From: Reticulomyxa filosa
Taxonomy: Eukaryota; Protista; Foraminifera
Reading direction: 5' to 3'
Assembly: GCA_000512085.1 (NCBI GenBank)
Contig: ASPP01000688.1
Location: 1-36,350, forward strand
DNA: 36,350 bases
Positions 1 to 30,200 of this stretch are shown one piece after another (the stretch's first letter is position 1; each line of letters opens with the position of its first letter). Made by a program: the position numbers and the translations under genes. A model generated the notes under the pieces. It saw only the letters and a program-made list of their open reading frames with translations. It did not search any database and was not told where the DNA came from.

Positions 1-57
1 CATATGCATACATATGTAGACAGTGCGATACACACAAAAAAACAAAGACCCACTCAC

Positions 58-2869: not shown

Positions 2870-3927
2870 TTATCGTGGATCTCCTTGAGCAAGCCCAATG
2901 GTTCCACAGGCCACACGAGCCCCCGCATGGCCAGTCGTTTTGGAGTCAGGGAACCCACCTTTTCCTAAGTCGTCTTCGTCAGCATGCAAAACAAAACTTC
3001 GTCCAACTACGGAATATGGTCCACCTTAAAAAAACGAACAAACAAAAGCAATTCATCGACTTCTTTACACTTCAGATAAAAACAAACAAAAAAAGGATAC
3101 TTTGTTAAAACTAAACAAAGTTTGACTTGGGAATCTTGTATATCGAGGGTCGCTTTTCCATCCTTGCCCGCAACCACGTTGCCAAGATCGCCAACATGTC
3201 TTTCTTCATCATTTGGTCCTCCTAATTTTTTTTTTTAAACTGTTCTTTATTTCTTCTCCTTTTTTTTTTCCTCCCCCCCTTGTTTCTATCCTTTTCTCTC
3301 TTTCTTGTATCCCCAACAGAATAAAGAGTTTATAATGAAAATAACCATGATTTTTTTCAAATGGGTTGTAATGTGCCCCTGCTGTTTTGCACCCTTCAGA
3401 GAGGTCACCAAATTGGTGAATGTGAAATCCATGTTTGGTATTTGGCGGAAGTCCGCTAATTTCTGCGTGAATTGCTGTCACCTTGCCGTCGCATGTGAGT
3501 TCAACTTTTCCATCTTTTTTTTTTTAAAAAAAGGGGAAAGGACATCATAAAAACGTTCATAGTTTTTTTTAAAACTGTGTTTATTGGTTTAGTGTTTGCT
3601 TTGGTACAATACTACTCCTCCACTTTTGATATAAAGAAAAGGTTCTTAACTGACGTTGGAACCACCATCAGGTTTTAGTAAACATATTGCACGGCATGGT
3701 TTTTCAGGAGTTCCACGAAATCCTTTTCCACACTGACAGTTGCCTCCCTTGCCACATTTGCAAGAGCCGCCCACTGAACAGCCACCCACTGAAGAGCCAC
3801 CCATTGAACAGCCACCGCTCTTTTGGCATATTCCAATCTTTCCTATCTGGCAGGAATTTTGGCAAGCCCACCAAGAGGCTCCTGCTCCGGCTGCAAAAGT
3901 TACCAAATATTTAAATGCTCGAGACAT
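2870..3927 (-). CDS. SOD1: Cu/Zn superoxide dismutase with an N-terminal hydrophobic and Cys/Gly-rich extension (exons 3927-3651, 3513-3346, 3221-3117, 3024-2870; ~234 aa)
   Basis: The spliced product has all SOD1 metal ligands and signatures: [61 protein letters not shown]. Three GT-AG introns keep the frame. Confidence 0.95.
3767..3820 (-). repeat. Imperfect 15-bp tandem repeat encoding GG(C/S)S(M/V) x3 in the SOD extension
   Basis: Plus-strand units gccgcccactgaaca / gccacccactgaaga / gccacccattgaaca. Confidence 0.8.
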
Positions 3928-4248
3928 AGTACTTCTCCTTGACTTGTTTTGAATGACAATTTCAACTTAAAAAAGACGTTCCTTAAAAAAAAGTCAAAAG
4001 CTTGAGTGTCGTCTTCGTTCGGGTACAACAAAGAGTAGATGGGAAAAATGCCATTCTTTTTTATTGCTACAAGCACTTTGAAAATTTGAAATACAGTCAA
4101 CGTCAAGCAGACGGTGGAAATTCTCTAGTAGGGAAAATTTAACTAACTTAAAAACTTAAAACTTTTGAATCTCCACACAATTCAAAAGTATCATTTTGTG
4201 TTCAAGAAGCCCCTTTTTCTTAGAATCACCAGCAATTGGTAAATAATT

Positions 4249-5584
4249 ATGGCATTATTAGCAGGCGACAAGAAAAAGAAATTATTGATGGTCCCAGGAC
4301 CAATAGAATGTGATCAAGAAGTGTTGCAAATGATAGGACAGCCTTCAGAATCAGTGGTACACCCAATTTTTATCAAATCATTTGGTGACTGTTTACGAAA
4401 CATGCGCAAACTATTTTGTGCAAATGAAAGCTGTCAACCGTTTATACTGTCAGGAGGAGGAGCACTAGGTTGGGACTGCACAGTAGTGTCGCTCTTGGAA
4501 AGTAAAAAGGACAAGGCGCTAGTCCTAAATACAGGTTACTTTGGCGAAAATTTCCGTGACTGTTGCCGTGCATACGACATTGAGACGGACGAGTTACAAT
4601 TTCCAATTGGCGCGGCGGCCAATGTTTCTGACTTGGAAAAGCAACTGAAAAAGAAAAAATACAAATTGTTGACAATAACCCAAGTTAAAAATCATTTTCT
4701 CCCTAAAAAACATAAAAGTATCCTCGAATTTGTGTACATGTATTGCACTTTTTTTTTTTAAAAAAAAAAAAAAAACAAAAAAAAAAAAAAAGGTGGAAAC
4801 GTCGACAGGTGTTTGCAATGACGTCCGTGAATTGGCGGACACGTGTCGCCGAGTTTCTCCCGAAACATTGATCGCAGTGGACGGGGTGTGTTCGTTTGCT
4901 GCCGTACCGTTTTATTTTAGTGATTGGAATATCGATATCGCAATAACGGCATCTCAAAAAGCATTGGGGGCACCTCCTGGCTTATGCGTGATGATGTTGT
5001 CAGAACGGACGTGTAAGTACCTAATGAGCGAACAACGTAAAAATGCAGTGAGGAGTTGGTATTGCAATTTGCAACAGTGGCTGCCTATCATGCAAGGCTA
5101 CGAAAAAGGTCAGATTTGTTACTTTTCCACACCCAATGTGAATTTGATCAAGGCTTTGTTGGTGTCCTCCCAACAACTGCTCAATGATGGGCTGGAGCGC
5201 AGCTTTGCACGTCATAGACATGCCACGCTCAGCTTTCGAGAAGCGATGAGGGCTTTGAACTTGTCCTTGTTGGTTCCGAATGATGATCAAGCTGCCGCTA
5301 CTGTCACTGCTGTGTGGTTTCCTCCAAATATCAACCCTGCAGAGTTTTTGAAATATATTGATGATTTTGGGGTAGTCGTTTCTGGTGGATTGCATCGCAA
5401 AATTAAAACTCAATATTTTCGAGTTGGACACATGGGCATCAGCGTCAATCCAAATCGAACTGACTTGCTTCAAACAGTTCAGGCTATTGAATATGCCTTA
5501 GCAAAATGTAAAGTTAGTAATTTTGAAAAGGGTGCCGGTATCAGTGCTTTTACCTCAGCTTTTGGTACTGTTTCTAAATTATAA
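4249..5584 (+). CDS. AGXT: Alanine-glyoxylate / serine-pyruvate aminotransferase (class V PLP enzyme), peroxisomal (exons 4249-4683, 4793-5584; ~408 aa)
   Basis: Motifs LLMVPGP, NTGYFG, TQ|VETSTGV, AVDGVCS, TASQKALGAPPG (PLP lysine), FSTPNV and FRVGHMG. C-terminal PTS1 signal SKL. One phase-0 GTTAAA..AAG intron. Confidence 0.93.
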
Positions 5585-5656
5585 TTAAGTTAATCATAAA
5601 AGGAAGATCTCTCCATTTATTCTTAAAAAAAATAAATTGCAACTCGCATTTCATAA

Positions 5657-6305
5657 ATACTCAACTGGCAGCTTAAATAATTTCCATAAAGGCAATACAA
5701 GAATTTTTTGGAAAAATCTAATTTTTCTTCTTGACCTAAATTGTTAATTTATCTACGAAGGGTAAATAGTTACGGTAAATTTTAAGGGCTACTCTCACTC
5801 TGATATCTGAAAAGCGATAAAAAGATATCACAACCATAACCGTATTTCGGCAAATTTTAATATAGACTTTTAAGTTTGCTGACTTGTTAATAGTGTAAGA
5901 AGAGTAGTTACAACTAAGTGTAATACGAAAGGCACTTTGTTCAAAATAAAATATCAGTAAAACAGAATTAAATAAGGATAATTCTCAAAACATAAAACAA
6001 GAATGAATAAAGAAACAGTGATACATTCGGTATAAGTGAAAAGTGATAAATTTTTTATAAGTGTGTAGGGCAAGCCCTTATCACACATGGCTGAACGCCT
6101 ATGGAACTGAGGAGCTCCCTTTGGGTTAAACCTCCTCAACAAACTACCTCTTACTTGTTTTCTCTTACTTCTTTTGTCTTCTGATTTATTCTTTAATTTA
6201 CTTTGTTTACTGAAAGTCGCTCTCATTGAGAGTAACAATCTTTCGTATTACATTTAGTGAAGCTCTTCACTGTAGACTCCCCACAAGTGTGGTATATTTT
6301 TTCTC
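5657..6305 (+). ncRNA. U1: Expanded variant U1 snRNA candidate (~650 nt; 3' end uncertain, may extend to ~6410)
   Basis: 5' end ATACTCAACTGGCAG (5657-5671) matches human U1 ATACTTACCTGGCAG at 13/15. U1-70K-like loop ATCTACGAAG at 5751-5760 (human GATCACGAAG). Contiguous four-way junction: helix H gcag 5668-5671 / ctgt 6270-6273; SL1 5672-5786; SL2 5787-5909 (ggctactct/agagtagtt); SL3 5913-6258 (19-bp stem 5913-5931/6240-6258). Sm-like ATTTTTTC at 6296-6303. Stem imperfections are mostly G.U pairs on the + strand. No credible ORF. Confidence 0.8.
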
Positions 6306-6484
6306 AAATTAATAATCAATACTTTATAAATTAATTTAATTTACAATTTCTTTCGTCCTTTTAAAGATTTTATTTTAATGAAAAATCCTAATTAAAAAGA
6401 CCCGAAGCAAACTCTATTTCTTAACTTTTTTTTAAAAAGAAGTTTTTTTCAGTTTTTATTAGTAAAAATATTTTGCTAAATAAA

Positions 6485-9216
6485 ATGTTAGGAGTTTTGA
6501 CTTTATTACTTATTTTAGGTTTGACACTAAGAAGTAGTGTGGGGTCAATGATAATAAGTTGTCCGACAAACGCCGATTGTGAAGTAAACTGTGCAAACAG
6601 CACGTGCGCTAACAAAAAAATTACTGTCCGATAAGTACCAATTCCAAAAGCTACAATTGCACAGTCCGTTGTTTAACTGCCTACTCCTGCCTCAACACAG
6701 TAATTCGAGCGACCAATGATACTTCCACTTTACTTTTCGAAGCACTTCAAACGAATGTCTCTCACAATGCAGGTTCGTTTTTTTGTTTTTTTTTGAACGG
6801 CATTGTTTTAAAAAAAGTTTAAACATAAATTGTTCTAGCGATATTTGCCAATGGTGCAAATAATGTGCAAATTCTATGTAATGGAATTTGTTCGTGTGAT
6901 TCTATGACATTGATGGTAAAGAAAGCACAGTCGGTGACGGTGATAATAAACAAAACCATTGAAAACAGAGCCTTATATGCGATGAACTACGGGGCGTTGA
7001 ATATCAACGATTCACAAAACGTATACTTAAGTTGTAACAACCCAAATACATGCCTGTATACCGAATGGAATCTTTACGGCAATGACAACGTATCGATTGT
7101 TTGCAATGGATATTATGCTTGTTATGAAAGTAGAATTACGATCGGTCAATCCCAACAAGTCATGTTTCAAGGTTAATCTCTTATACTTTGTACAAAAAAA
7201 AAATTACTTTTGCATGTACCTATAAACATATATAAATACAAAAAAAAAAAAAAACAAAAAAACAAAACATGATAGCGACGTCAGGTCAACCCTCTGTACT
7301 GCAAAGCTGGATAACCTTCAAAAAAGTAACGTCATTGACCGTGCAGGGTGCGGACGGTGCAATACTAAACAACTGGTACTACTTGACTGACATTGAGAGA
7401 TTCTTGTTAGATATTGCTGGTACCGGAAACACGCTAGGCACTGCATGGAGCAGCGATAATGTATCCAGTGTCGCGATTGGCAGTTTTGTAATAATTAATA
7501 CACAAATAATTTACTTTTTACAAATTTTTTGTTGGCTTTTCTTAAAAAAAAAAAAATGACAAATTGAAAAGATTGGAATGTAACATCTTATTGGCTGACA
7601 AGTAAAGTAGCAGATGCGTATCAATGTCCAAATGACAGGGACTGCCACATTCGTGTGGATACAGCAATGGGCAAATATGTGAACATATCATGTCCATCAG
7701 CAAATCGCTCCTCTTCCACAGACGGAAACCAGCCAAAATGCTTGTTTTATTGCACTGCTAATGGTGGTTGTAATGGCATTCGATTGTTTGCTATTGACAG
7801 TCCTTACGTCACGTTATTCTTCAATCCTACTAGCAATTCTGGCTTTTTCTGTCAGTTTTTTTTTTTTTGCTTTTCTTTGATTTTTGTTGTTGTTATAGTA
7901 GCATATGTACACTATATGCTTTTGAAATTTTGTATTCGTACTTTGTTTATCGTTTGTGTGGGTATATGAAATATAAGAACACAAACTTTAAAAAAAAAAG
8001 TGAATGCAAATGGCTCTGGACTGAACGAATACGAAGGGGTAATAAATATTAGCTGCAACACTGAGTATAGTTGCAGAAGGGCAGTGTTCCAAGTGTCGAG
8101 ATATGCCACTCCGACAGTGTCTTGCAACGCCTACATGTCGTGCGAATCGACCCAATTCAACATATCAAACTTTCACAATTACGCAACGATCATGTCGTCC
8201 AACTCTGCCATGTACGAGGCGACGTTGTCACTGTGGTCTGGATCCACCGTTTTTGCCGCAAGCAAGTATAGTTCTGGTGCAGAATTGTCATTTTATAACA
8301 CTTTTTGGTCGTTTGATGATATTGACCAAGTCGACATGATCTGTTTCGTTTTTCTTTTGTTTAAATCTCACTTTGGGGAATAATGATCATTGATAGCAAA
8401 AAAAAAAAAAAAAAACCAATTGAAAATTAGGTGAACAAAACAGTGACTGCCTCGAAGCAAAATTTAACGTGTCAAAAGTGAATCAAATGAGAGTAGTCTG
8501 TAACAGTAATTCTTTTAATTCTGGCGAAAATTGCCGCAGCGCCAAATTTGATGTAGACCAATACACCGATTTTGATTTGACGTGCGCTGGGTTCTTTTCA
8601 TGCTTTAATATGAGTGTTTGGTACGACGCGAGCCAACCGTATTACCACAGATGTGACATTGGATGCTACTTTAACTCTTTTAATCAAGATGCCCCAAGCT
8701 GTGATACTGTGAATATTATCGTGGAGAACAATCAAATAGGTTATCAAGTCATTTCTCTGTGGTGTCAGATTATTGATGATAATCAAGCCTGTAACGATGT
8801 CACTGTCCAATGTGGAGACTCAGAATTAATGTGTACGTGTCCTGTTTTGTATGACTCCAAAACAGGTATATGTGTGTTTTTTTCCCCAATTCTGTTCTAT
8901 CATAATAATGCATTTTGCTTCGACGTCTCATTACGAATATTGGGATGGGAACAACAAAAAAAAAAAAAAAGGAGTTTGGGATTGTGAGGGCAAATGTGGC
9001 ACGTCCATTTGCGAGGACAGTTCGAACAGTGGCAAGTTGTCTATTCACGCAATTGCTAGAATTGTGTTGTCGGTGTTGGCTGCTGTTGTGTTGTTAAGTT
9101 GCGTTTGCTATCGGTGCTTCAAAAAACGCCAAAGCAGAAATCGACTGTTGCCATCGTCGGAAGAAGGTAGGCAAAATAATGTTCCATTTCCTAACATTGC
9201 TTATCAAACAATGTGA
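6485..9216 (+). CDS. Cys-rich repetitive type I membrane (cell-surface) protein; 7 exons; one apparent -1 frameshift near 6620
   Basis: Signal peptide MLGVLTLLLILGLTLRSSVG from ATG 6485. Repeated Cys-spaced modules (e.g. CNGYYACYESRITI, CAGFFSCFNMSVWY). Near-C-terminal TM IARIVLSVLAAVVLLSCVCY followed by basic RCFKKR. In-phase GT-AG introns at 6773-6838, 7172-7275, 7483-7571, 7851-8000, 8343-8430 and 8866-8971. Confidence 0.8.
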
Positions 9217-9462
9217 AAACAGAGTATTTTTTGATGGGTTGCTCTGTTCAAACAAAGGAGTGTATCGCCTTTTTTTTTTTCCCCCTCATATTGTTAATTA
9301 CTCGGTGAATGTGCTGCTTTCATAAACAAGGTGTTATATTTTCTTTTGTCCATGCATTTGTTTACGTTTTTTTTAATTCTAATTAAATACCGAAAAGAAG
9401 TAGTTCCATTTTTCACTATTTTTTTTTTAAAAGAAGAAGAGAAAAAGATGCATTAGTGAGGA

Positions 9463-10695: not shown

Positions 10696-11134
10696 AATGT
10701 GGGACACACCTTTTACGTGAAAGAATCTCCCTTTGCTGTCTTTTTTGTACAACACATATTAAATAGCTTGGTGGCAGTGCTCTTCATAAATTTAAATGTT
10801 GAAAAATTTGGAAATCAATTAAAGTTGATTTTGCTTGATAGAAATTAAATTTTTATTTTTTGATATTCACTTCTTTTGAAGAAAGGGCAAGGAACACACA
10901 AATACCGAGATAGTATCTCCTGTGTCTTTTCTGAGTTTATTGTCTTTGAGGATACAACACAAAAAGGGAAAAAAACTAAAAGAAATATTTCCAGTTCCAA
11001 CATCAAACTATTTTCCATTGGGACTGTTCAGGTGGCGATTTTTGTGTTTCACTGACATTTTATCAAAAGATAAAAAAAACAAAATAAAACAACCTCTTAA
11101 ATTCAGGACCTTCTTTCAAGAATACGTACCAACC

Positions 11135-11533
11135 ATGCCACACAAAACACCGCAAGATCTGCAAAAAAAATTGGCCGAAAAGAACGACCTGGAAAATGAG
11201 TTAAAAATGCTCGACAGCACGGAAAAACCAGAAGAAGCCGCCAAAGAGATAATGAGCTTTGTTCTTAACGGAAAGGAGCCCTTGTTGGATGATGATAATC
11301 CTTACAGACCATCACGTGGTGATTGTTGCGAAAAATGCATAATGTTTAGTATTTTACATCAATTAAAAACTTTTCCCTCTTGTTTCCTTTTTACTCTCTG
11401 CTTCTTCTCTTTTCCTTCAAAATGTTAATAATTTCTTTAGGATTCACTCCATTACTTTCAAAACTGTAAGGCACAATACAACGGGGGTGTTTTTATTTGT
11501 ATATATGTGTCTGGATTTGGATGTAGCATGTAA
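11135..11533 (+). CDS. Heterotrimeric G-protein gamma subunit (GGL domain, 71 aa; exons 11135-11343, 11527-11533)
   Basis: Coiled-coil N-terminus, EAAKEIMSFV, EPLL (DPLL-like) and NPY (NPF-like) motifs. Splicing GTTTAG 11344 to TAG 11526 gives the C-terminus CCEKCIIM-stop, a CaaX prenylation box. Confidence 0.85.
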
Positions 11534-13436: not shown

Positions 13437-13780
13437 AATGTTTTGAGTTTTTTTTCATTTAAAAGTTGAAATCGTTTCTTCTTTTATATATTTCGTAAAG
13501 TTGCTGCTACTATTTGATGCAAAATAAAAGTCTTGATAATTTTGAACAATTTTGCTAGACAGATAGAAAAATTTTCTTGTTGATAAAAGTTAAAACTGAT
13601 ATACCAATTAATATAAACGTGTTACAAAAGTAGATTTTAAACTTAAATACTTGCGTTTATGCGGTGGTTAAATGTTAGGGATAAAACTTTTTTTTATCTT
13701 CAGGACCTAATTTGAGATTACTTGTGGCAGCGACCCTCAATATATAAAATAAATAATAGTCCATTCTTTGCATATCAAAG

Positions 13781-15183
13781 ATGGCAGATCAACATTATCA
13801 GATAACGACCCATTCTATTTCAAATGCAGCGTCAATTGAAACTACAAATGCAATACAGAGGAAGGAACAAGCAAACGAGGAAAGTAACCGGAACGAAGGA
13901 ACCACAAATGTGAACAAAGAGAGAAAAGAACCCCACGAAACATCCAAAGTACAAAAAGAATTATTGCTATCACATGGGCCCCCTCTGTTACCTTACCACC
14001 CAACCGTCAGTTTGGAGGTGTGTCACTATGTCACTTCCGCTTTGCCTTTGAAGCCAAATGCAAACCAACTCACTTTTTTTGTTTTTTTTGCATTTTTATC
14101 ACATTAAAAAAAAAAAAATTGATTGAAACAACCAAGAAACACACGCACACGCGCACAATCAACTAAACAAGTAACAGCAATAATAATAATAAAAAAGAAG
14201 TGTATTGTTCTTTTAAATTTGTGTGTGTGTGTGTGTGGGGAAAACAAGGAGATAAGCAACAATGAAGCAATGGAAAATCCAGAGGGATTACTAAAGAGCA
14301 AATTGGAAGATTATAGCAGTGACGAAAATACCCCATTGTTCAGTTTTCTCTTGCATCTGTTTGGATCAAATTCAATGTACCATTCCTTACACATTTTTCT
14401 TGTTTCATGGTCAGAGATCAAGTACAAGCTCCTTTTGAATCGAGACGCCATCATCTAAGAGATGCTGGTTGGCTTGTATTTTTTAAATTATTCATTTCAA
14501 TGTTGTTTTTTTTTTTTTAACAAACAAACAAACAAGAAAGAGTAAAGCCTTGACTTTGGACTTTTGATCCATTTGCACAAAAAAAAAAAGTGGCGTATAT
14601 GTACCCTATATCACACATACACACAGGAAACGAAAGAAAAAACGGCGGTATTGAACGCATTGAAATAGGCGACTCGGAGAGCGAAGATGCAAAGAAACAA
14701 GGAAAAGAAGAAGAAAGAAGAGGAAGAGGAGCAAATAACGAACAGCAACCAAATCACCGACATTCTCATATAAACAACAACAATAATAATAACAATAACA
14801 ATAACAACAACAACAACAATCTGGGCATAAACATGAACAATAATAACGATGACGATGACGATGATGAAGATGCAGTGGAAGAAGGGGATGATGACGACGA
14901 TGACGACGACGAGGATGCAGAGGAGGAGGAAGACGTCGAGGACGAAGAGGAAGAGGAAGAGGACGGTGATGATGATGATGACGATGAAAAAGAGGAACAA
15001 AACAACAGCAGTCATGAAAACAACGACGGAGGTGAAAGAGGTGCGCAAGAAGACGAGGAGGAAGAAGAAGAGGAAGAGGAAACCGCCGTGGAAGAAGAAG
15101 ATGACGAAGAAGAAGCAGAGGCCACCTTGTCGTCATTTGCCAATCGAAACAAAGATGAACAAGATGAACAAGAAGAAGAAGAA

Positions 15184-15215
<32 letters not shown>

Positions 15216-18200
15216 AGATGGTGATGGTGAAGAAAAGATGCATGAAGAAGGAGAAGAAGGAGAAGAGGAAAAAAAACAAGAAATAGAATGGTCACAGGCA
15301 AGACCTAATCGACAACTTCGAAAAGGTGGAAACTTTGATTTTGATGGAAGACGTGGAATCACACAAAGGAAACGTCCTCACAAAGGTATATCATACATAT
15401 ACATATATATATATATATTTTTTTTTTTTTTGTTTGGATGACAAGATTATATATTAGCTGTTTCAAAAAATAACACTTTGCGACTTGCACAGAGAATTGC
15501 TATCCCCATGAAACAGATCCAGGACAATGGAAAATAATAAACGAAAATGACATGGAATCTTACTACAAAAGTTATCAGAAGAAATATGGTATCAATTTCT
15601 ATCAAATGTACAACGATTGCTTTCACATCGATACCAAGGACTTTCACTTTCAATGTAGGCTTCTTTTTGTTGTTATTGTTGATTCTATTTTCCACAAATT
15701 AACAACATACATATTATTATAATTATTATAATTTTTTTTTTTTTTTGGTATTGAAATTGTTACAAAGCATACCCCGACAACTTGCCATTTTACATTTTCT
15801 GGAAAGAAATACAGCGATGGGCCAACTTAGCAAGTTTATTATTATTATTTTGTGTGTGTGTGTAAGCATTTTCGATTCTTTTCTGTTTGCAAATCCAGTT
15901 TGTAATGCGTACATGCGTGTACATTTGTGCATGTATGTGTGAATATATAAAAAGAGCAAGAAGAGGCAATAAATGAAATAATTGACAACACTGATCGCTT
16001 GTTGGCAACATTCCGCACATGGCTGCGTGCGTTCATAGGTCGAACGAGAGGATGGACGATCTCACCACAGATCTATATCTTGTTCCTTCACTGTTGCAAA
16101 GTTTGGCGTTGTTTGTTTTCCTGCATTCACTTTAAGTGAATTGATTTGAGAGTGAGGGAGGACACCACAAACAAAATAAAACAAAATAATTGGAAAGGAC
16201 ATGGCGGAGAGTATAAATGTGATATTTGGAAGTCATTGCTACTATTCCCACGTCTTGACATCCTACTGTTACATTATGCAAGCCACTGGAATATCTCGAT
16301 ACAATTCTCATACATCTCGCAATGGTACAAAGAAAGAAGACCATCTTTTGTTGTATTGTGAGAGTACATTGCATTTCTATTTATTTGCTTGTTTGTTTGT
16401 CTACTTGATATGCGCTTCGACACGCAATTGCGACTGGGGGGGGAGGAAAAGGCGAGGAACAGCCAAGAGAAAGCGCAGTTTTATACCGATCGACAAAGGT
16501 GAAGAACGCATGGGACCAACTCCATTTCAATGCGTATGCACGTTTTGGTGGCGAGGTGCTATACCGGCCCTATCAAGCTGCCTTTGTCGCAGCTGTGTTG
16601 ACGTTGCGTCGGACTTTTTGTTCACTTTTATATAAAACAACAAAGCAAGCAAAGAATAGTCGAGTCACATGTGTGTGTATATGTGTGTGTGTGACTTATA
16701 CTATCAAATGTCAAAACATAGGTCTTCGAATGGGTTACAAAATTTGCTCAACGGTGTGAATGGAATCATGTTGTGGTATGATGATCAATGTCGATCACTT
16801 GAAAATGAAGAAGACACCGAACTCCAATTTTTGGCCAAGACCATCCAAGTATTATTATTATTATTATTACTATTATTATTATTATTATTTTTTTTTTTGT
16901 CATTAAAACATCATATAACATATCCTACAAACAATACAACAAAAAGCATTATTGCAAAGAGAACAAATTTGCGGAATTGGCAACAATGTACAAGAACATT
17001 AGAACCGTTGTATTACCGCGTCAATGGAGCGCGCCAAGTCGCATCGAAGAGATGGTCACGTTGGTGTACGAATTTGCTCGTTTGTTGAGAGGACCCCAAC
17101 TCACGAGATTTGTTTTGGACTTTGCCAACACTTTTTCCCAAAATTTCTCGGCTTTTCCAAATGTATGTTTTTCTCTCTCTTTTTTCAATGAGCTTGGAGA
17201 CATACAATTTACAAATGGAAAAAAAAAAGGCCTTGATGCGACACTTCCACGAACACGAAACTGGCAATAATGGCGCTTCCCCTGTCGTATCCTATCATCA
17301 CAATCTCTACACAACACATCAATACATGAGCAAAGTATTCCAGTGTTATCAACACACTTTATCGTTGTGCTACAATTCTCACACTTGTCCTGAAGAAGTC
17401 TCCCGGTTTTGTTTATTTATTTATTTTTTATCTTTTGTTTGTTTGAAAGTGAAAGCAAAAAATAACAACAAAAAGAGTGGTGGAATTGCTGCGGATTGAA
17501 CTGGCAATGAAACAACTACGTTGTCCAACCATCAATTTGCGATTGGATGGACTGTCGATCATTCAACGCACAATCGATCAGCTTCCAAGATATCGCGATG
17601 AAGACGATTATTTCTCTAAGGTTTGCTCTACCATTCCTCTTTTAAATTGTTTTGCTTTGAAGAGGAGGGTATTGTTTGGTTCAATGCATTAGCTTGACTT
17701 ATGTTGTGACATCACTCAAACAGAGATATATAGATAGCCCTTACTCACATTCGCGGAAACGGAATCAATCTATCCTCTGGATGAATGAAGAACGATTGGC
17801 AAGTTTGCTGGAATTTCACGACTTTGTTGGTGTGGTGTTCGGTGCTGATGCCAATCCGCAACTGATTCAGAAATCCATTCTGGTGTTGAAATTTCTGGCT
17901 TCCGCAGGCAAATTGAGTGACATGGATCTGACAAAAGTTTGGGAATCGAGTCAAGGGAAGCACGAGAGTCATGTGGAAACCATTTATCGATTGCTCTTTG
18001 GAATTGCAAACACATTGTCCAAAGATAAATCTGAGTCTCTGCTGCGGCAAATCGTCGAACATGTGCCTTTGCACACCTTTGACCTGCGCTTGCTTGATTT
18101 GTGGACCGAAATCACACAAACCACTTGTCCATCTGTCACTTATGTCCCGCAGCTAGATTTCAAGTTTTTTTTATCGATTTAACACACACACACACATATA

Positions 18201-21200
18201 TTCAGACATATATCATCTTATGCATATAACACGCTTGTGTATGCGTATTGTATGTATACTTACGTGAAGTTCGGCATCAAAAAGCGAATTGCCTTTTGGA
18301 TTGGATATACTGTGGCAAATGTTTGTTCACAGTTGAGTCTTTTTATTTTTATTTTGTTTTAATGCTTGCTCTGACAAATGCACAATGAAATAATCAAAAC
18401 AATGTGAGTCAGATGAAATTACATTTTCAATGCGACTGAATGTTGCTGAAAGATTAGTGAAATTGCTGTCCTCGCCCGATTATATACATTTACAACGAAC
18501 TGTACTATTTTTTGTAGTGCCAATCTTACCAATAATTTTTACACTGGATTGACACTTCGATTAGTTCGTGGTCTTTTTGCCAAAACTGTCGAAAATATAA
18601 TGCTCGTTTAGTGCTTTGACTTTCTCTCTCTCTCTCTCTTGGATGTTTTTGTGTGGAATTGAAAACAAATGATGTATATGCTGTGCATGATTGCTTGTTA
18701 ATGAAGCAATTGACGCAATTGAACGGATATTTGCAAGAATTCCAAAACTTTGTAATGTTGAACATGTATAACCCATTGAAACAAAACATTTTCAATTCGG
18801 GTTCCTCTCATTTTATCCTCACCACCTCTTCTGAAGTTGATTCCATTCTTTTTTTTCCCCCCTGCCCCCCAATTAAACGTACACTCATCCTTTTCCTATG
18901 TTTTTTTCTTGTTAGGAAGAAAAATACGAATCAAAAGAAGAAAAAAAAAGTGAAACAAAGAAAAGGATACAAGAAAGCGTGACGGAATTGCAACAAAAAC
19001 TACTGTTTTTTGATTTTTGCTTGCGCATTTGTAATGCGACAATCCGCAAAGAAGATATCCACAAAATTTGGAATGAATTTGTGTTAAGAGAGGCAGATCC
19101 AATCAAACAAGCGTTTTTAGAATTTTTTCAAAATGCAATTGATTGTGAATGCGTGTTGAGGACCCATTTTACTTTGAGAAATATTTTGGCATCCAATGGC
19201 GAAATGATTACAGATCCTCCCAAATTTGACTCGCAATCACTGGTGCATCAATTTAACAAAGAATCATTTAGCGAGGGCGTCATTCGATACATTATCAAAG
19301 CGTTGTTGCCGACATTGTCATTCAAACAAATGATACAATCGGAATTTAATGTGTGGAAAGACTATTTCACATGGGTGAATGTTAAAGATGGCCATTTCCA
19401 TTTTCGTACGATCGGTGAGTCCTGTTACATCCTTTACGACACCAAAGTCGATGGCTTGAGCTCGTTGTGGGAAATCATCTTCCAAGCGCAAAACTCCAAT
19501 GTCAGTCAAATGGCACAAAGTCTGCTGAAAAATATCCACACGCATTTAGATCCCACTGTCAACGTATTACAATTGTATGAAAACTTTGTCGCTGTTTGTA
19601 TGAATCACGCCAACCACGCCAAAGCGATGTCGTTGTCATCACAAGATCTATCCGGTACGTTTAGTCAAACGACTTCTGATGACAATAACAACAGTAATGG
19701 CAATAATAGTAGCAATAACAGGAATAACAACAATAACAGCAACGATGAATGTGATTCATTTTCGTCCTCTTTAATCCCAAAATCGAATCGCATCAAACTT
19801 TATTGTACAACAAATGAAGAAGCCAAGACCATTATACAGCGATGTTTCCAATGTTTAAATATGGCCATTTGTAATGTTCGGTTTAATATTTACTTTATTT
19901 ATTTATTTATTTTTTTTATAGTTTGCTACAAATATGATGTTGTACATGACGTATACGTTGTCTAGTTTCGGCCAGCACCAGCGACCCAAGTCTGCTTGTC
20001 AGTGAACGTAATTTACAAGAGTCAAAAGAGCCTCTCGAAGTCACTAAGATTGAAACTGCCAGTCACGGCGACCTTAGATTCGGTTTTATCCGAGGTGGTG
20101 AGCCAATTCCACATCGATCAACGCTATCCTATTGAATTCGTGTCAGGGGTCAAATTGACCGATTACCAAAAGGAATTGCGTCAGCTATTTGCGGACAAAT
20201 TGATAACGCCCAATGGATCTAGAGAGGGTAACGTACCCACAATCGCCATGAGATTGTGATTGATGACCGTATCACAAGTCACGAAGCGATAATAACTTCA
20301 CCACCGCCCGCAGAGAGAAAGATGCCCGTTCATAAGCCCGTGTCCCCCGATCGTGCCGAAGACGATGGTTCGGTCATCGCCCAGCCTTCACCCTCACCGT
20401 CACCAGGACCGCATCAACCCGCCAACCACGACACGACGGGAGGGTCCGACTCGGCTATGCAAAGTGCACACATGATGGAAAAGGAACGTACGCGACAAGT
20501 CTTGAATTCGTCGGGCCAGGGGATGGAACAAAAGAGTGAGCACGAAGACCCCATGATCAAAGAAATCGACAGCACGGAAACGGGCATGAACATAGGTGCG
20601 AGTGTGGATGAAGATCGAGGTCCTGATCGAGATGAAATTGATTCGGATGATCCGTCGCTCTCGCAAATCCAGACCTTGGGAAGCGAGAGCAAGAATAGGG
20701 ACCAATTGGCATTGGTATTGCGACAACCGTCCACCGAAGAGGAGGAAGAGGAAGAAGAAGAAGAGGAGACCAACGAAAATCTTCTTTTGTCTCAGGACAA
20801 ACCTTTTCATAACGAAGAGGAATATCAACAGGAGATTCATCCGATCCATATCCTTGCAAAAAATCAGTACTTTGACGATTTGTTCCGCTTCTTGCAATAT
20901 CCTGACGACGCAATTGCGCATGAGGCCTGGAAGATATTGCAGCACTTGCCCGTGAATCGCCATCACTTTGATATCATCCAAAAGATGAAACCCGAGTGGA
21001 TCAAGTACTTTGATAGCAGATACAACCCATTGCTGACCGCACGCTATGCGTTAAATATCATCTATCAACTCGCGTACGAGGAAGGGCCCTTTATCAACGA
21101 CCGAAGGTCTTGCAGTGTTTGGCTGCGAACTTTTGTGTCCAGTCGAGGTCTTGTGCCACTGCTCGAACTGGCATTGAAAACCAACGTGGTTGGCGTCTTC

Positions 21201-24200
21201 AAAACAAAGGATCGAAGCGATCCGGAAATGGCCTACTTTGCCGTTGTCACGACGTTGTTGGAGACAATCATCGAATACATGGGCGACATTCTGCAAAAGC
21301 AACATCAATCTTTGCAATTAATACTATCCGCGCAATTTGTGAACCACCTTTTCAATATGATATTTGTGCTGTCCAGCTTCAACGAGGATATGACAGATCA
21401 CGACGCAAAGGATGACACTTGGAGGGATACCACTAACACCGGGGTATACGGACCGCATTTACCCTCACTCCAAATGCACGACTGTAATCCCATGCATTCG
21501 AGAGAAAAGCGCAATACCTGGAATTACGTGACCAACGACCTATTGCTAAGCTATGCGATACGTTGTTTAGGACTAATTGAATTTGTGTTGCTTCATGATG
21601 TCAACAAGACGATACTTAATCATATTTTAAACGCCGATTTGTGCTCGTGGCTATTTCAAGTACTGCTTCAATGTTCCAATCATACGTTGAAATGTCAAAT
21701 CAAACGTCGCTTGCTTCTAATGCTGACCAAGTATTTTCCGTTGGGAGAGACTGCCTCCAAAATTATGACGTCGAATCTCCCCAAAAAAATTCCAAAACAA
21801 AACGAAGCTTTTTCTGAGAAAGCCATACAAGAAACGCTTTTGCCACGATTGCAATCGCTCGCGGATAACACGCAGGATCCAAGCTTACATTTCAAGTTTT
21901 TGAAATGTGGCTTAAGTTTGTTGGGATTAGATGTACCGACGGGCTCAATCGGAATCGAAAAAGAAAAACCTCTGAAAATTGTCGATCAATACAAGTTTCA
22001 ATGCTTTTTTTTATTGCGACTGATCATTCGATTGTTGGAAGATTTGTGCTCTACTTTTGCCGTGCTCGTCAAATACCCCGACTTAAAAGTTTGGCTTTGA
22101 ATATTCATTTGATTGTCTTGTTTGTTACGTCTCTTTGTAGACACAGAGAGGAAGGAACAGACGATAATAATACCAACAACAAAACAGAGCAAAGTGGTGG
22201 GAGGATTGACACGAGTCGAATGCGTGACCAACGATATGACATGGGATGACCTATTTGTGAAATTTGTTAAGTACTTGGAATCGTATCCCGTGACCGAGTC
22301 ATCTTTGGATGCACCAAAGGCCGAAGCATTGTTAACACATTGCGACCATTGTGAAAAGTTGTGCTTTTCGTGGTGGATTTGTACCGACACCAAAGAATCC
22401 CCACAAGGAGATCAATGTCTTCAGGGATCCATGGTCATGGCCCATTTGATTCTCACTCATGTCCCAAATATCAAACAAACTGTACTGTCCAAATGCAATT
22501 TGACAGCATTTATTGATTTCTTGTATTCCAAAGGGCTATTCCCCGACGTTCGACAACAAGTGGAACATGATAAAGGAGACATGTACTATCTTCCATTGTG
22601 TAAGCAGGTTGTGACACGAATGAATGCAGTAAATCTATTGTCGGAATTGGGAGAGGTGTCCCCACAGCACCATCAACACTTAATTCATATCATGATTTTG
22701 CATCACACAAATCAAAGAACCAACCAACACTTTTATGATCAAAATTGGTTTTATGCCAATCTGGTATCCCATCGATCCTTTGCAAGTTTTGTGTGCTTTC
22801 TTTATTTACTTTTTGCTTAATGTACGTATATACATATATGTATGTATATACATTATGTATGTGTATATATATGTAATATAATGCAATAGCGCATTGCGGA
22901 CTAACCAATTTGGGCGCAACATGTTATATGAATTCGTTAATGCAGCAATTGTATATGACTCCGGCATTCCGATTTTCAGTGCTCACTCGAAATTTACCGA
23001 GTATCTTGGACAAACATACTGAACACAAAGAAGAAACACAAAGTTACTTTTTCAAGTTTTTACTTTTCTGATCTTTGTTCTGAGTTTGTAAAACAATGTC
23101 GGTTGAATCCAATGCACAGAGGATCCGAAAGAAAAAGCTGAAGTGAAAATCGGAGATCCAAAAGAAAAAGTTGAAGTGAAAATCGGAGATCCAGATGATC
23201 CAAATTGTAATATGTTAGCACAGTTGCAAATGCTATTTTCGCATTTGCAGGTAAGCACAAACAGAATTAACAAATGATAGTACAATTATCCGTTAGTCCA
23301 TTTAAAAAAAAAACAAACATAAATCATACAAATGGTGCAATGTCGATAGGAATCAGACGTGAGATTTTATAATCCCAGGCCATTTTGTGATTCTTACAAA
23401 GTTCGTGGTGAACTAATGAATGTAAGGGTCCAAATGGATGTGGACGAGTTCTTTGCGACGTTTGCAGATAAATTGGAAAAACAGCTGCAATTTGACAATC
23501 ACGAAAAAGTGATTCAATACTTGTTTGGTGGGGTATTTGTGAATCAATTCTTTGGAAGGAAAGCTTGCCATCATTACAGGTGTTGTCAATTGTGTTTATT
23601 AGTGGTGCCACATATGAGCGCAACTTTGACACATGCACTTGCTTGTTGTTTTTTTCTTTGTATGCCAATAACAGAGAACGGTCAGAACCATTCATAACGT
23701 TGACCGTGGACGTACGGAACAAAGGAGACTTGGAAAAAAGTTTGGAGTCATTTGTGAAAGGGGAAATAATTGAAGATTACTACTGTGAGGTGTGTAAAAA
23801 TAAAACGGAGTTATTCAAACGAGTTTCTGTCAAAATCTTGCCACGACACTTGGTTATCCATTTGAAAAGATTCGAATTTGATGTTGAACATTTCATTCGG
23901 GTATTGTACACATATACGTATACACACATATATATGTTTGTATTCCTATGTGTGTATAACCTATGCATGTGCTTTATTGTCATTACAAAAAAGGCTAAAA
24001 TTAACGATCAGTTGTCGTTTTATCGCTATTTGGATATGGAACCATATATGCAACAAAGCTTGGAAAAAAAAGAAGAAAAAAAAGAAGAAAAAAAAGACGA
24101 GACCGATTTTTCCACAACGGATCCACACGAAAGAGAAGAATTGGAAAAGCAACACAAACAATGGGAGAATTTGTATGACGTGGAAGGTTCAACAATGTAT

Positions 24201-27200
24201 CAATTAGCAGGAATTATTCAACATTCCGGAACGTGTGATTCTGGTCATTACACTTCCATTATTCGAGAGAGATTACCTCGATATGGTTTGCTTTGTGTTT
24301 TTTTTTGGTTTTAGCTTTTGTACTTTTGCAAAAAAGAGACAATAAACTAGTGAGAATTTTGTTGTTTGACTCGAAGATATGGAAATGGAATCGGGATGGA
24401 TATGCTTCAATGATAACCTAATCAGTCGATGTGACCCCTCAAAAATTCCGGCGGAATGCTTTGGCTATGGAAACTCCTATACTCCGATGCACAATCAACG
24501 ACAGTATAGTGCATACATGTTGTTTTATGAACAGCTATCGCATAAAGACACAGCAGTGGTGCGTGAAGCATTGACCAAGAACCCGAACATTAAACGATTC
24601 GATTGCAGCGATAGTGATGCCTCGTGCATTCCTTCCGTTTCGCCTATTCAATCCGGCCAATCGCGAACAACGTCGCTGAACAAACGTGACAGTATTGTGA
24701 CTGTTCCGAATCAAAGCACTATGGACTTATTTCATGTGATCAATTGTGAATCTTCTTCACAAGCCAGTACCGCGGCCAATGAGAAAATGCAACTCAAGAG
24801 GTCATTAACGGAAGCATTCCAAGAGGACAATATTGGCGAAGATATTAACAACAAGCGAAGACGCCTTGTAACTGCTTCGAATACCACTATTGGTACCATG
24901 CCCTATTTTGCGCACGGCAACATTGATATGGGAAACGAGTCCATTGACAATGAGAGTGTTATTCGTGACCATTTGTCCAATGAACTGTTGTCGAAATTCC
25001 CCAAAATATTGCCGTCGTACCTTCAAGCATCATTGGTCCCACCGCACATTATGAAAGAGTTTAACCTTTTTTCATTGTTGTTGCTATTATTGTAATGCCC
25101 TTTTGTTTTTGGATAGATTGAACAAAGAGAATGAAGAAGCAGCGAGAGAGAGATATGCATTGAATCGTGAGTTTTTGCGATCTTGTCTGAACATAGCCCT
25201 GCAACAAACCAATACGACAACGGAAGACATTCAGTTGGTGATCTACGTGTTGTTGGAAACACTTTGTCACAGCGTTGATTTGCCCGACGTGTTCACACAA
25301 AATGACTTGAGACGTCTATTGGTAATGATGAGTGAAAATACATATGCTTGTGGGTGGTTTATTAACGAGATAGTATACGAACAGAAAGGTGATTGGGTGA
25401 AGAATTTGTACGATCAAAGTCGATGCAACAAAACGTGGAAATCCTTTTCCTTCGGTCTGCATTACATTATGGAGGAGATACTATTGCAGGCGTGCTTCAC
25501 TTTGAGACCATTGGAACTCGCTAGCTATTTCGAGGTATGTAAAAAAGAATTACAAAAAAAAAAAAGTTTAAAAAGGTAAAGACATTCGAATAATTGTTTG
25601 TGTAGTGTGTAACGACGCTCAAGTATCAATCAGACACTCATGATGAATGGAAAGACAAAAAGGCAATGCACACACTGCGTCCCAAAAAACGCAAATTAGA
25701 CCAAGATATTGTATCTGCGAACGATGATGTAGAAGATGACAAAAACAATCTGTTGCAACTGCAATTCCATCCATCTAAACGCCCGCGACTGGATAATTCG
25801 CTGTCTACAAGTGCAGAAACAGCACGTTCCAAATTGAAAACAAAACCAATGTATCCATGGCAAGGAAAACAGCTAATTCCTAAACTGATATCCCTAGTGC
25901 TTGCGGAATTGGGACCAATTCGCCACGACAATACAGAGGCCCCCAATTACATATCGTTTCTCTGGAGATTTGCCGAGTTTGGAGCCGCAGAGAGAGCGCT
26001 GCTAATTCGAGCAGGGGCGATATGGCGAATTTTGGCCTTTGAATGCAAAGATTTCGTCGCGTTGAAAACGGGAGAGCCATCCGAAAATGAAAAGAAAAAT
26101 CCTGTTAAGAAACAGCAATCTGATATCAAATTTTCTGACCTTATGAGGTTGTTATCGCTGCTAATCACGTCTGTTCATCCCTCTTCTATCCATGATTTTC
26201 TTGTCGAGGTTAGCACCAAACAAAAGAGAATTTCCTTTGTTTTTTGTTGTGTCTTTGCAAAGAAACCAAATGAAAAGACAAGTAAGCATTGCTTGTTGTT
26301 GTTACACCATCCGCACTCACAGTACTCACATGGTAAAAAATTTGTTCATCGCTCGACAGAAATGGAAAATGGAGAGAGCGATACGTATGAGACATTGAAA
26401 GAAGCAAACTCATTCGAAATAACTGTGCCAGTGCTCGACCTTGACAGTTCATTTGTTTCATGCCTTTGCTTGTGCAACGTTGTAGTTGTTACGTTGTTTG
26501 TTGTCTGTTGGCCTTCGGACGACGCCCATAGAAGACGAAACCATGAACACACTTTTGGGAATGGATGACGCCAGCGAAGAATTAAAGTACAATGAACACG
26601 CATTTCACAAACCGAAACTTGTTCTGGACCCTAGGCGACTAAACAGCATTGCATTGATATCCGATGTCGTTGTGAAAGTCAAACAATTGTTTTCACAAAG
26701 CGATTGGCTTTTCTTAACGAGTGAGTCCGGTATCGCAGAAGCATTCCAGTCTCATTATTCCATTCTGCAGTTTGCGGTAGCGCATTTGGTCTATTCTTCC
26801 CCTGTGTAAGTGTCAATCTTTGCTTTGTTTCATTTTGTTTCCTCAAATGCAATTGATTACGTGCAATTTGTGTATTTGAAAGGTTGGAACAAATGTTATT
26901 ACATTTGCTACCCAGCATGTTATGGCAGTGCGATTTGAAACAATCAATTGCTTTTTCCTGTCTTGAAGCCTTTCTAATTCCGGGAAATTCTGTCTTTGTG
27001 GCCGATGAACACACCTTGCAAAGATGCGGCCATTTCTTACTGTTGCACATATTTAAGGTAGGATTGCGTGTCTCAATTCATACTTTTTCATCCTTTGAAT
27101 GTGTGATTGAATGAAAACAAAATTAGGCTATTGATGGATTGAAAGAGAAATATATAGACGACCCACAAGAGATTCTTTCGTGGTTCATAACAGCGTGGAG

Positions 27201-30200
27201 AGCTAAAAAATCCATCGTTTTTGATACATTTTTGCATGCTCATTTATCGACATGGGCACCATTTGTATACAGGGCACTTGTTCCAGTACAAGACCAAAAA
27301 GCGTGTGCCCTGATTCAACAAATCATTCAAGACAAATTGAAAGACGTTTAGTGCTGCTTCTCTTTTTTTTAACACAAAAATGAAATCAACTTTCTGTGTC
27401 TATTTTGTATTCGTTACATAGTCGAAAGTCCAGTATCGTGAAGCACAGCAAAAGAATAACGAAGGGGAATTGTATGTCTTGTATTTTGTTGTCGTTGTTG
27501 TCATCAAAACAAATCAACCCGAAAACAGCTATTTGACATTCACATAATTCACAACGACAGACGTGCGATCGAAGAAATGGTGAAAAAGTTTTTAGAATTA
27601 CTACTGAAGCCGAAAGCAATGGCTGAGTGTTATATGAATGCAAAGAGAAGAGCAGCACAAAGTTCCAATATTATAAGATTTGGCGGTCCTAGTTATCCTC
27701 GTTATTCATTCACTATTGATTCTATTACTTTCTTGGCCACCGAATTTCATGATCTAATCATTCCCATTTTAGTTTAGTTTTTTTTTTTTTTGAGAGGGCT
27801 GTGTGCACATTCAAGTCAATTCCTTATAAAATATTGTTGTGTTATGTGATGAAAAGTCAACAGATCAATGTTGGGGAAAATGTGCAAGAACTATATGCGC
27901 TGGTCTTCGCAGATCATCGAGATAACCACTTGACCATGGATAATGATATCCTGGCAATATACAGACTCATTCAACTAATACTGCGCGCTCCAATGAATCA
28001 AAGCGAGGCAGCGTTAACCAGGTTATTTCGAGAAAAACTCATTGAACGTGTGTCGGTTATCTTTACATCCGATTCCATGCAAATACAGCAATGCTCAGAA
28101 ATAGTCATTTGTTTATGTAACATAATGTCCACATTTATGCCAATTTCTCAACAATGGATTGATCGTTACATATCTAACCCTATCTTTATGTCGAATCTGT
28201 TTCGATTCGTATGTCTGCGACACAAACCCGTAGTAGCTCCAGAAATCGAAGTTTCAATAAAACAACAAACAAAAAGAATAAGAGAGTTTTTTGTCTTTCC
28301 CTCTTTTTTTTTTAATTTTCCCTCTTTTTTTTTTGGCTTTGCCCATAGAAATCGATGGCTCCGTTACTAAAGAGCTTAATGAAAATTGACAAAATTCGAG
28401 AAAGGTCTGCTGAATATTTGAAACAAGTGTTGTTATTTTTGACGGAAGAGATTCGCAAATATGGAAATACGAATAAATGTGATGATATATTCCTCAATTT
28501 TTGGATTGAGTTTGGTTCAATTTAATATTTTTTCAAGGCTTGTTTGTGCTCAAGCACGCAACATAACAAAAACTCGAATAGGACGATCTTCTTGTTGATG
28601 AACGATGAAAAAAACTTTGCAACGCTCAATGAATATTCTGGAATATCTATAGTCATTCAGGTTTGACAAATGTGTTTATCTTTCAGATCTGGTATGCAAA
28701 AAGAAAATAATAACAATATAAAAAAGATTGTAAAGAAGATCACACAATTTAAAGATGAACCCATACAATGGAAATCGATGGCAAAAGCATTTCAATTTTT
28801 GCATCAAATGATAAGAATGTTAAGTAATTATCTCTCTTTTCATTAAAATACGAATCCAATACATGCGTTTGTTTGTTTATAGATATCGTGAGAGAGCGTG
28901 TGATGTTAGTTTAGATGTCAAGACTCTTATATTGCACTGCGTGCTCAGTTTTTCAAAGACTACATCGTTATGTGATAAAAATAGTGATATCAACATTGAC
29001 ACAATTCTGTTGAACTGTTTACACGAATGTGTACGACACGACTTGGCAATTAAGGCCATCTCTGCTGCTGCAAAAACACAAACGGAGTCCAAAAACGCAC
29101 ACTTGGATACCAATAACATATATGAATTTACGCAGATAATGTTGAAGATAGCATTTGATGTTACTCAGCCGTACGCAGGTCATAATCAATTACAAGATGA
29201 ATTCAAATCTGGTTTCGGACTTCGTGCATCTTTGCTTGTTGCTACCGAAGCGCAATGGAAACTCTCGAAACAACAAAATGATTTAATTTGGCTCGTTCGA
29301 ATCTTTGAGACAATGCTTCAATTCGCCGATACTACGATGCTAGATTTCCTGACAATACAACTTTCAAACAATTGGCTTCAGTATTGTTGAGTAAATTTCG
29401 AAATAATTTTGTTGTTTTCCTCTGAATAACATGACGACAGGTAATACTTGTTTGATTTGTGTTGAATTGATTGATATCAATAGTAATATTGATATGGTTT
29501 GTGGAAAGAGAGGGCTGGCATTTATCTTTAATGTTATTTGAGTATGTGAAAGACCATATTATCCCAATTATTGGCCTTTGCAACGATCTTCCCTGTCATT
29601 CATTGACACAATTGTTGGTATTGCGACGAAGTATTAACTGCTTCATTTCAAATGCAAACACGTGTTTGGATAGTGCAATAACAAGTCACGTCTTCAATAC
29701 AACAATGAAAAAAAAACCAGAAAATCCTCTTACTGTCGAGTTCGGCAAAACCACTTCAAAATATTGGAGATTTTTATATTGGTACCACTTTCACCAATGT
29801 ATCGATCAATATCTGATTAAAAATTTAGCAAATATTACTGATTCGGACAAAGTGGATTCATTGTTTTGTGAACAAGCAAATGTTTAGTATCTATTTCACG
29901 TGCTTTTTTTGTATTATCTCTGAAAGTTTTCATAAATACTCTTATATCCACAGCTGGCAAAATGGATTTTATCTGCATCAGATGGATGTGATTGGCCCGT
30001 GCAGAATAATGACACAGATGTGGACATGAAAGAGCCAGGACAAGAGCAGAAAGAGAAATATATTTTCACTTATCAGCAAATTAACTTGATGATTTCACAA
30101 ATTCAGTGTCTTCAGGTAACTTTGCAAACATATTGCGAGAAGTATCCTAGTGCTGATAAACTGACTGCTCAGCTTCGCAAATTAGAAGAGTTGCTAAATG

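What the first reader, a model, noticed from the sequence alone, without database searches (positions are those of the whole stretch)
3116..29888. Dominant GTT donors and a recurrent one-base-shifted GTTNAGT 5' splice-site class
Seen (manual count): about 40 of ~59 inferred introns begin GTT. Ten read GTTNAGT: 3116(-), 11344, 14338, 18332, 18606, 27346, 27772, 28819, 29386 and 29882; 3650(-) reads GTTAAGA. Many GTT donors have A rather than G at -1. Reading frames show cleavage is still before GT (e.g. SOD L-C-G-P-Y, G-gamma CIIM). Canonical GTAAGT/GTGAGT/GTATGT donors coexist (57, 17163, 25535, 26806, 27473). Known: +3U is rare in model eukaryotes, where bulged or shifted U1 pairing is a minority mode. 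Inference: either two U1 types serve two donor classes or one U1 uses two registers; U6 ACAGAGA pairing may also be altered.
Basis: partly seen in the sequence, partly recalled or inferred. Interest (0 to 1): 0.8.

Follow-up and report, generated by a model that had tools for sequence, protein, structure and literature searches.

The report
Intron starts read one base over
In the foraminiferan Reticulomyxa filosa, roughly a third to a half of introns carry the usual splice-start signal moved one letter downstream of the cut, a reading mode known in humans only as a rare exception.

Summary
The window is R. filosa contig ASPP01000688.1. Of 57 curated GT donors, 37 start GTT. That is only modestly above the T-rich intron background (p=0.02), so GTT dominance is the weaker signal. 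The strong signal is register. GTTNAGT occurs in 10/37 GTT donors against 0.46 expected (7/25 in the motif-blind or homology-anchored set, p=2e-8), but in only 4/435 decoy GTT sites. AG sits at +5/+6 in GTT donors and at +4/+5 in the others (11:1 versus 0:6). GT at +6/+7 (21/57) outnumbers GT at +5/+6 (8/57). Weak GTT donors have -1A (13/19), whereas +5G donors have -1G. One motif read in two registers fits best (leave-one-out 66 versus 46 for one matrix). This is the Roca-Krainer +1 shifted U1 register, here apparently a major mode; all proven non-canonical registers cover 1.5% of human donors. No RNA run was listed and no snRNA gene was reachable, so junctions are inferred and U1/U6 involvement is untested. 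Three of the ten donors are ambiguous and 27473 is unsupported. The scan noted GTT and shifted donors, and ACAUAC U1 variants, on other contigs; that variant does not explain these donors.

The parts
3110..3116 (-). Shifted-class donor T|GTTTAGT, Cu/Zn SOD intron 3 (3116-3025)
   Evidence: gives K-L-C-G-P-Y in an intact SOD frame; motif-blind posterior 0.95
3644..3650 (-). Shifted-class donor CA|GTTAAGA, SOD intron 1 (3650-3514); near-perfect +1 register match to canonical U1
   Evidence: posterior 0.89; shifted duplex -4.4 vs canonical 0 kcal/mol
3339..3345 (-). GTT donor G|GTTATTT, SOD intron 2 (3345-3222)
   Evidence: posterior 1.00
4684..4792 (+). Aminotransferase intron with weak donor A|GTTAAAA and poly-A acceptor
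   Evidence: junction ITQ|VETS matches foraminiferal homologues; same intron position in L002
11344..11350 (+). Shifted-class donor T|GTTTAGT, G-gamma gene; acceptor 11526 gives a C-I-I-M-stop end
   Evidence: posterior 1.00; the GenBank model uses the same donor with another acceptor
14338..14344 (+). Candidate donor T|GTTCAGT (ambiguous with 14343)
   Evidence: posterior 0.37
18332..18338 (+). Candidate donor CA|GTTGAGT (ambiguous with 18325); strongest shifted-register match
   Evidence: posterior 0.43; shifted -6.0 vs canonical 0 kcal/mol
18606..18612 (+). Shifted-class donor C|GTTTAGT, USP gene
   Evidence: posterior 0.81; upstream frame assumes a one-base homopolymer error near 18508
22786..22792 (+). 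+6G+7T donor A|GTTTTGT before the USP Cys box
   Evidence: homology to foraminiferal and related USPs; posterior 1.00
27346..27352 (+). Shifted-class donor C|GTTTAGT
   Evidence: in-frame stop follows; posterior 0.95
27772..27778 (+). Candidate donor A|GTTTAGT (motif-blind parse prefers 27777)
   Evidence: posterior 0.08
28819..28825 (+). Shifted-class donor T|GTTAAGT
   Evidence: posterior 0.92; shifted -4.2 vs canonical 0
29386..29392 (+). Shifted-class donor T|GTTGAGT
   Evidence: posterior 0.93; sliding both ends by one base gives a stop
29882..29888 (+). Shifted-class donor T|GTTTAGT
   Evidence: in-frame stop follows; posterior 0.76
23251..23257 (+). Canonical-register donor G|GTAAGCA, USP core
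   Evidence: homologue alignment shows the gap exactly here
23580..23586 (+). Non-GTT donor with +6G+7T, G|GTGTTGT
   Evidence: homologue alignment
23901..23907 (+). Non-GTT donor with +6G+7T, G|GTATTGT
   Evidence: homologue alignment
24286..24292 (+). GTT donor in canonical register, G|GTTTGCT (-1G, +5G)
   Evidence: homologue alignment
25535..25541 (+). Canonical-register donor G|GTATGTA
   Evidence: posterior 0.91
26806..26812 (+). Canonical donor T|GTAAGTG
   Evidence: posterior 0.91
51..57 (-). Canonical donor A|GTGAGTG
   Evidence: in-frame stop follows; acceptor lies off the contig
13781..30403 (+). USP9/24/34-like gene, about 4,300 codons and 40 introns, carrying most of the donors analysed
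   Evidence: frame-consistent model in three segments; homologues

Best explanation
These are GT-AG major-spliceosome introns whose donors are recognised in two registers. Class 1 (-1G, +5G) pairs with U1 normally. Class 2 (-1A, G+1, unpaired U+2, U+3, any +4, A+5, G+6, U+7) is the same signal slid one base downstream: G+1 faces U1 C9, U+3 faces A7, G+6 faces C4, U+7 faces A3 and -1A faces U10. Cleavage stays before GT. When +5A+6G+7T is complete, the exon side is free; when it is incomplete, -1A compensates. This accounts for much of the +3T excess; the rest reflects T-rich intron starts, which may also recruit a TIA-1/Nam8-type helper to very weak donors. Shown: the two offset classes and their couplings. 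Inferred: that an unchanged U1 does the reading, and any helper.
For: AG at +5/+6 vs +4/+5 is 11:1 in GTT donors and 0:6 in the others (p=4e-4; 8:0 vs 0:4 in the high-confidence set). -1G occurs in 6/7 GTT +5G-only donors but 1/20 GTT +6G donors (p=1.6e-4). -1A occurs in 13/19 weak GTT donors against a 22% decoy background (p=1.5e-5; 9/13 high-confidence), and in 2/20 non-GTT donors. +7T follows +6G in 21/24 donors. Leave-one-out log-likelihood: one matrix 45.6, two free matrices 57.3, one matrix in two registers 66.4. Canonical U1 separates GTT donors from decoys only when the shift is allowed (AUC 0.56 to 0.76 by energy; 0.52 to 0.82 by H-bond count). Shifted and +3/+4 loop registers are experimentally proven in human cells (PMC4856993).
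Against: No RNA-validated junction. One contig and 57 donors, 40 of them in one gene; only 10 are anchored by homology or protein sense. No U1, U5 or U6 gene was seen. The shifted register predicts -2C and +4 purine, but -2 is mostly A and +4 mostly T. About a dozen GTT donors have no predicted U1 pairing in either register. Four non-GTT donors also carry +6G+7T. -1A/-2A could instead reflect U5 loop 1 pairing.
Confidence: 0.55

Rival explanations
1. A second U1 type serves class 2 donors, with an arm complementary to them (for example C8A, giving ACUUAACUG, or U6A, giving ACUAACCUG), as U1 co-evolved with GUUUGU donors in Entamoeba.
For: Precedent: Entamoeba ACAAAC and Mastigamoeba ACGUAC (bioRxiv 2022.06.08.495308). 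C8A and U6A variants score slightly better than unchanged U1 (AUC 0.835 vs 0.82). Earlier scan notes, unchecked by me, report more than one U1 type in this genome.
Against: The gain over unchanged U1 is negligible and only appears in the shifted geometry. No single-base variant works unshifted (best 0.64), and the reported ACAUAC variant gives 0.55. An inserted-base U1 would keep -1G favourable, but +6G donors nearly lack it.
Confidence: 0.2
2. The +6G+7T signal is read mainly by U6: its ACAGA box pairs one base downstream (through an insertion in U6 or a bulged donor base), and the two classes are U5/U1-strong versus U6-strong donors.
For: +7T follows +6G in 21/24 donors, while +6T follows +5G in only 8/19, which is background level. 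Four non-GTT donors and three GTTTTGT donors carry TGT at +5..+7, the U6 ACA complement moved by one. In the normal register GTTTAGT leaves U6 about one base pair (inference). A -1 U6 register has been proposed for STAT3 (PMC11162779).
Against: It does not explain why +5A+6G is tied to +3T (11:0) or why weak donors take -1A. U6 pairing is normally fixed relative to the cleavage site.
Confidence: 0.17
3. Mostly compositional or curation artefact: +3 is unconstrained in T-rich introns and the GTTNAGT donors were picked because they look like donors.
For: +3T is only 65% against a 51% background (p=0.02). Three of ten donors are ambiguous. A raw strand count is unremarkable (14 sense vs 6 antisense). 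I curated the candidate introns by eye first.
Against: Motif-blind soft count is still 7.2 GTTNAGT among 56 introns. AGT peaks only at +5 in GTT donors (10, against 0-1 at every other offset); decoys give 4/435.
Confidence: 0.08

Closest known systems
Atypical human 5' splice sites read by +1 shifted U1 pairing (Roca and Krainer 2009, not held here; described in Tan et al. 2016, PMC4856993)
   Same: Same geometry; Tan's model oligos are CA|GUCAAGU (shifted +1) and G|GUUUAGU (asymmetric loop +3/+4), and G|GUAUUGU (loop +4/+5) matches donor 23901.
   Different: All proven non-canonical registers together are about 1.5% of human donors. Here strict GTTNAGT is 12-18% of donors, GT at +6/+7 is 37%, and the mixture model assigns about 57% to the shifted register.
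Entamoeba GUUUGU donors with co-evolved U1 ACAAAC (bioRxiv 2022.06.08.495308)
   Same: +3U is the commonest base.
   Different: Entamoeba keeps +5G+6U in the normal register, with about 88% of introns identical, in an intron-poor genome. Here GTTTGT is 1/57, donors are degenerate, genes are intron-rich and the G is more often at +6.
Physarum GUAUGU donors with ACAUAC U1
   Same: GTATGT donors occur (25535, possibly 17163); earlier scan notes report ACAUAC U1 genes in R. filosa.
   Different: That arm does not explain the GTT class (AUC 0.55).
Non-canonical U6 register at the STAT3 tandem donor (PMC11162779)
   Same: A GT dinucleotide displaced from +5/+6.
   Different: A single site shifted by -1; here the shift is +1 and recurrent.

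Membership tests
U2-type (major) spliceosomal intron | GT-AG termini restoring an open frame | tested here: met
   56 complete introns, 53-231 nt (median 92), give stop-free frames; GT-AG was assumed in the parse
U2-type (major) spliceosomal intron | Polypyrimidine tract and CTRAY branch motif | tested here: not met
   -20..-4 is 41% A and 31% T; CTRAY in 1/56
U2-type (major) spliceosomal intron | Removal seen in transcripts | not testable with these tools
   no RNA run was listed
+1 shifted-register 5' splice sites | Consensus displaced one base: +3U, +5A, +6G, +7U, with -1A | tested here: met
+1 shifted-register 5' splice sites | -2C and +4 purine as in the human class | tested here: inconclusive
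   -2C in 5/20 GTT +6G donors against 19% background; +4 purine in 4/11 strong donors
+1 shifted-register 5' splice sites | Better predicted pairing to canonical U1 in a non-canonical register | tested here: met
   advantage of at least 1 kcal/mol in 13/57 donors vs 22/400 decoys; assumes a canonical U1
+1 shifted-register 5' splice sites | Rescue by shifted but not canonical suppressor U1 | not testable with these tools
   needs a bench experiment
Entamoeba-type co-evolved donor/U1 | One strict GUUUGU consensus | tested here: not met
   GTTTGT is 1 of 57 donors
Entamoeba-type co-evolved donor/U1 | U1 arm changed to match the donor | not testable with these tools
   whole genome not held; no snRNA in the window
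U12-type (minor) intron | GTATCCTT donor | tested here: not met
   none of 57 donors; no minor-spliceosome components reported in Rhizaria (PMC11347168)

The most novel reading that the evidence does not exclude
The R. filosa spliceosome has been rebuilt so that the +1 register is the default at the active site: a U6 ACAGA box (or a dedicated U1/U6 set) reads G+6 U+7 rather than G+5 U+6, breaking the fixed spacing between the U6 helix and the cleavage site.
Probability: 0.2. Interest if true: 0.85.

Novelty: new variant of a known kind. Interest (0 to 1): 0.62.

Why it matters
Shifted pairing has been treated as a rare tolerance of U1. A free-living, intron-rich eukaryote in which it serves a third to a half of donors would be a natural system for asking how cleavage stays at GT when the U1 helix slides, and what U6 and U5 pair with at donors lacking +5G. 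I found no description of R. filosa donors in the paper library searched; the genome paper itself was not consulted. It also matters in practice: the public gene models on this contig retain introns and split genes, so surveys built on that annotation would blur the signal.

Tried and rejected
RNA runs: none was listed. Own-genome U1/U6 search: genome not held. Rfam: nothing real in the window or L083. The metagenome scan with the aminotransferase alignment returned uninterrupted, apparently bacterial loci and no usable foraminiferal introns. CAP-Gly and G-gamma searches gave only self and one short intron-poor paralogue contig, so no further R. filosa introns were obtained. GenBank models were rejected as a reference: P0126 translates a retained intron and uses wrong acceptors. 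A fully automatic flat-donor parse was too noisy on its own, so I curated by frame and then scored motif-blind. Rejected: cleavage after the G (needs a variable 3' terminus and gives a stop at 29386), U12 type, Entamoeba type, and the ACAUAC U1 as reader of GTT donors. Left out as unresolved: the CAP-Gly intron, a possible intron at 20228, and the gene near 36000. Roca and Krainer 2009 and Roca 2012 are not held and are cited through PMC4856993.

Full report
Source. An aminotransferase exon matched RFI_00636 of Reticulomyxa filosa at 100%, and the window is the whole contig ASPP01000688.1. No RNA run was listed, the genome is not held for searching, and the window has no snRNA. All junctions below are therefore inferred from reading frame, composition and homology.

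Building the donor set. The quoted strings are at the quoted places. I read the three frames and curated 57 donors in eight genes, with stop-free frames apart from suspected one-base homopolymer errors near 6630, 18508 and 20228. Each intron was rescored against every frame-compatible GT/AG pair with no donor motif in the model and junction flanks masked from training. Thirty-three donors reached posterior 0.7 or more. Ten are anchored by homology or clear protein sense: three in SOD, the aminotransferase intron, the G-gamma donor and five USP core introns, against a Nonionella protein and the closer locus L085. The union, plus donor 57 which is forced by a stop, is a 37-donor high-confidence set. 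The 'canonical' donor 27473 is unsupported.

What is more than chance. +3T is 37/57 (25/37 high-confidence; 7/10 anchored). That is far from the usual +3 purine, but only slightly above the 51% T at +9..+30 (p=0.02), so part of the GTT dominance may be relaxed constraint in T-rich intron starts. +5G (23/57) and +6G (24/57) are both strongly enriched (p<1e-8). GTTNAGT is 10/37 against 0.46 expected, AGT peaks at +5 only, and decoy GTT sites give 4/302 in exons and 0/133 in introns. The motif-blind soft count is 7.2 of 56. A raw strand count alone is not convincing (14 vs 6).

Anatomy: two registers. AG lies at +5/+6 in GTT donors and at +4/+5 in the others (11:1 vs 0:6). GT at +6/+7 (21) outnumbers GT at +5/+6 (8). 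GTT donors with +5G alone have -1G (6/7); those with +6G almost never do (1/20). Complete GTTNAG donors have a pyrimidine at -1 (8/11), and incomplete ones have -1A (13/19 against 22% in decoys). Written out, class 2 is the canonical string slid by one base, differing only where U+2 faces U1 C8. In leave-one-out tests a single motif read in two registers beats both one matrix and two free matrices (66.4, 45.6, 57.3; high-confidence 32.8, 21.7, 18.2) and assigns about 57% of donors to the shifted register (the fit was seeded on +6G). Canonical U1 energies separate non-GTT donors from decoys in the normal register (AUC 0.86) but GTT donors only with the shift (0.56 to 0.76). Cleavage remains before GT: with AG acceptors fixed, a later cut breaks the frame, and sliding both ends leaves a variable 3' terminus and a stop at 29386, although it is tolerated at the other sites, so protein sense alone does not exclude it there.

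Mechanism. Most likely an unchanged U1 binds class 2 donors in the +1 register proven for rare human sites, where all validated non-canonical registers amount to 1.5% (PMC4856993). This alone predicts both the +3U link and -1A. Against it, -2C and +4 purine are not enriched, and about a dozen donors have no predicted pairing at all. The T-rich tract behind the donors (poly-T in the first 40 nt of 20/56 introns) suggests TIA-1/Nam8-type help (PMC9311317; inference). A second U1 with C8A or U6A would look the same in these data. No single-base variant works unshifted, including the ACAUAC arm that earlier scan notes report for this genome. A U6-based reading is suggested by the tight +6G+7T pair, by the lack of +6T after +5G, and by four non-GTT donors with +6G+7T; displaced U6 pairing is otherwise reported for one human site (PMC11162779).

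Comparison. Entamoeba has +3U, but as a strict GUUUGU in the normal register with a matching U1; here GTTTGT is 1/57. Two relatives suggest the trait is not shared by all foraminifera: the homologous aminotransferase intron in a contig of the Elphidium/Nonionella clade starts G|GTACATC, and the one homology-supported intron of L085 (organism unknown) starts G|GTATGTT. Two introns are a hint only. Paper searches found no account of R. filosa donors.

Handling notes. Exons were joined from window coordinates inside local scripts only, to check frames and, to align and place the USP core against proteins already fetched. I ran the large protein search once, on USP exon 23676-23900, because the word search cannot see full-length relatives of an exon and Pfam had left two neighbouring USP exons unassigned; I had not first tried the word search or Pfam on that exact exon. 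Earlier scan notes were treated as leads, not as support.

Verdict. It is a new variant of a known kind, awaiting RNA and snRNA confirmation. Interest 0.62.

Noticed in passing
window, all 56 complete introns: Acceptors lack a pyrimidine tract: the last 20 nt are A-rich (41% A; A at -4 in 39/56; A at -3 in 21/56), poly-A runs occur in 17/56 and CTRAY is nearly absent. Introns are polar, T-rich at the 5' end and A-rich at the 3' end.
   Followed up: partly
window:13781-30403: One USP9/24/34-like gene of about 4,300 codons and 40 introns; GenBank splits it and translates retained introns (P0126).
   Followed up: partly
window:3651-3927 (-): The Cu/Zn SOD has an N-terminal Gly/Cys-rich extension with short repeats; the GenBank model ends at 3007 and misses the true C-terminus at 2870.
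   Followed up: no
window:11135-11533: G-protein gamma subunit; acceptor 11526 gives a CaaX end, whereas GenBank uses an earlier acceptor and a 118-residue product without it.
   Followed up: partly
window ~6630, ~18508, ~20228: Frame breaks without intron features, probably one-base homopolymer assembly errors.
   Followed up: no
window:33121-34383: Membrane-segment protein with a C-terminal RGS-like region, on the same contig as the G-gamma gene; assigned from sequence appearance only.
   Followed up: no
window:23130-23200: Short in-frame tandem duplication (about 36 nt) inside a USP catalytic-domain exon.
   Followed up: no
L002:599-659: Aminotransferase intron position is conserved between R. 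filosa and a contig of the Elphidium/Nonionella clade, with a non-GTT donor there.
   Followed up: yes
L085:1462-11065: The closest USP relative found (Logan SRR32380747, organism unknown) is almost intron-free, with two apparent short introns, against 40 in R. filosa.
   Followed up: partly
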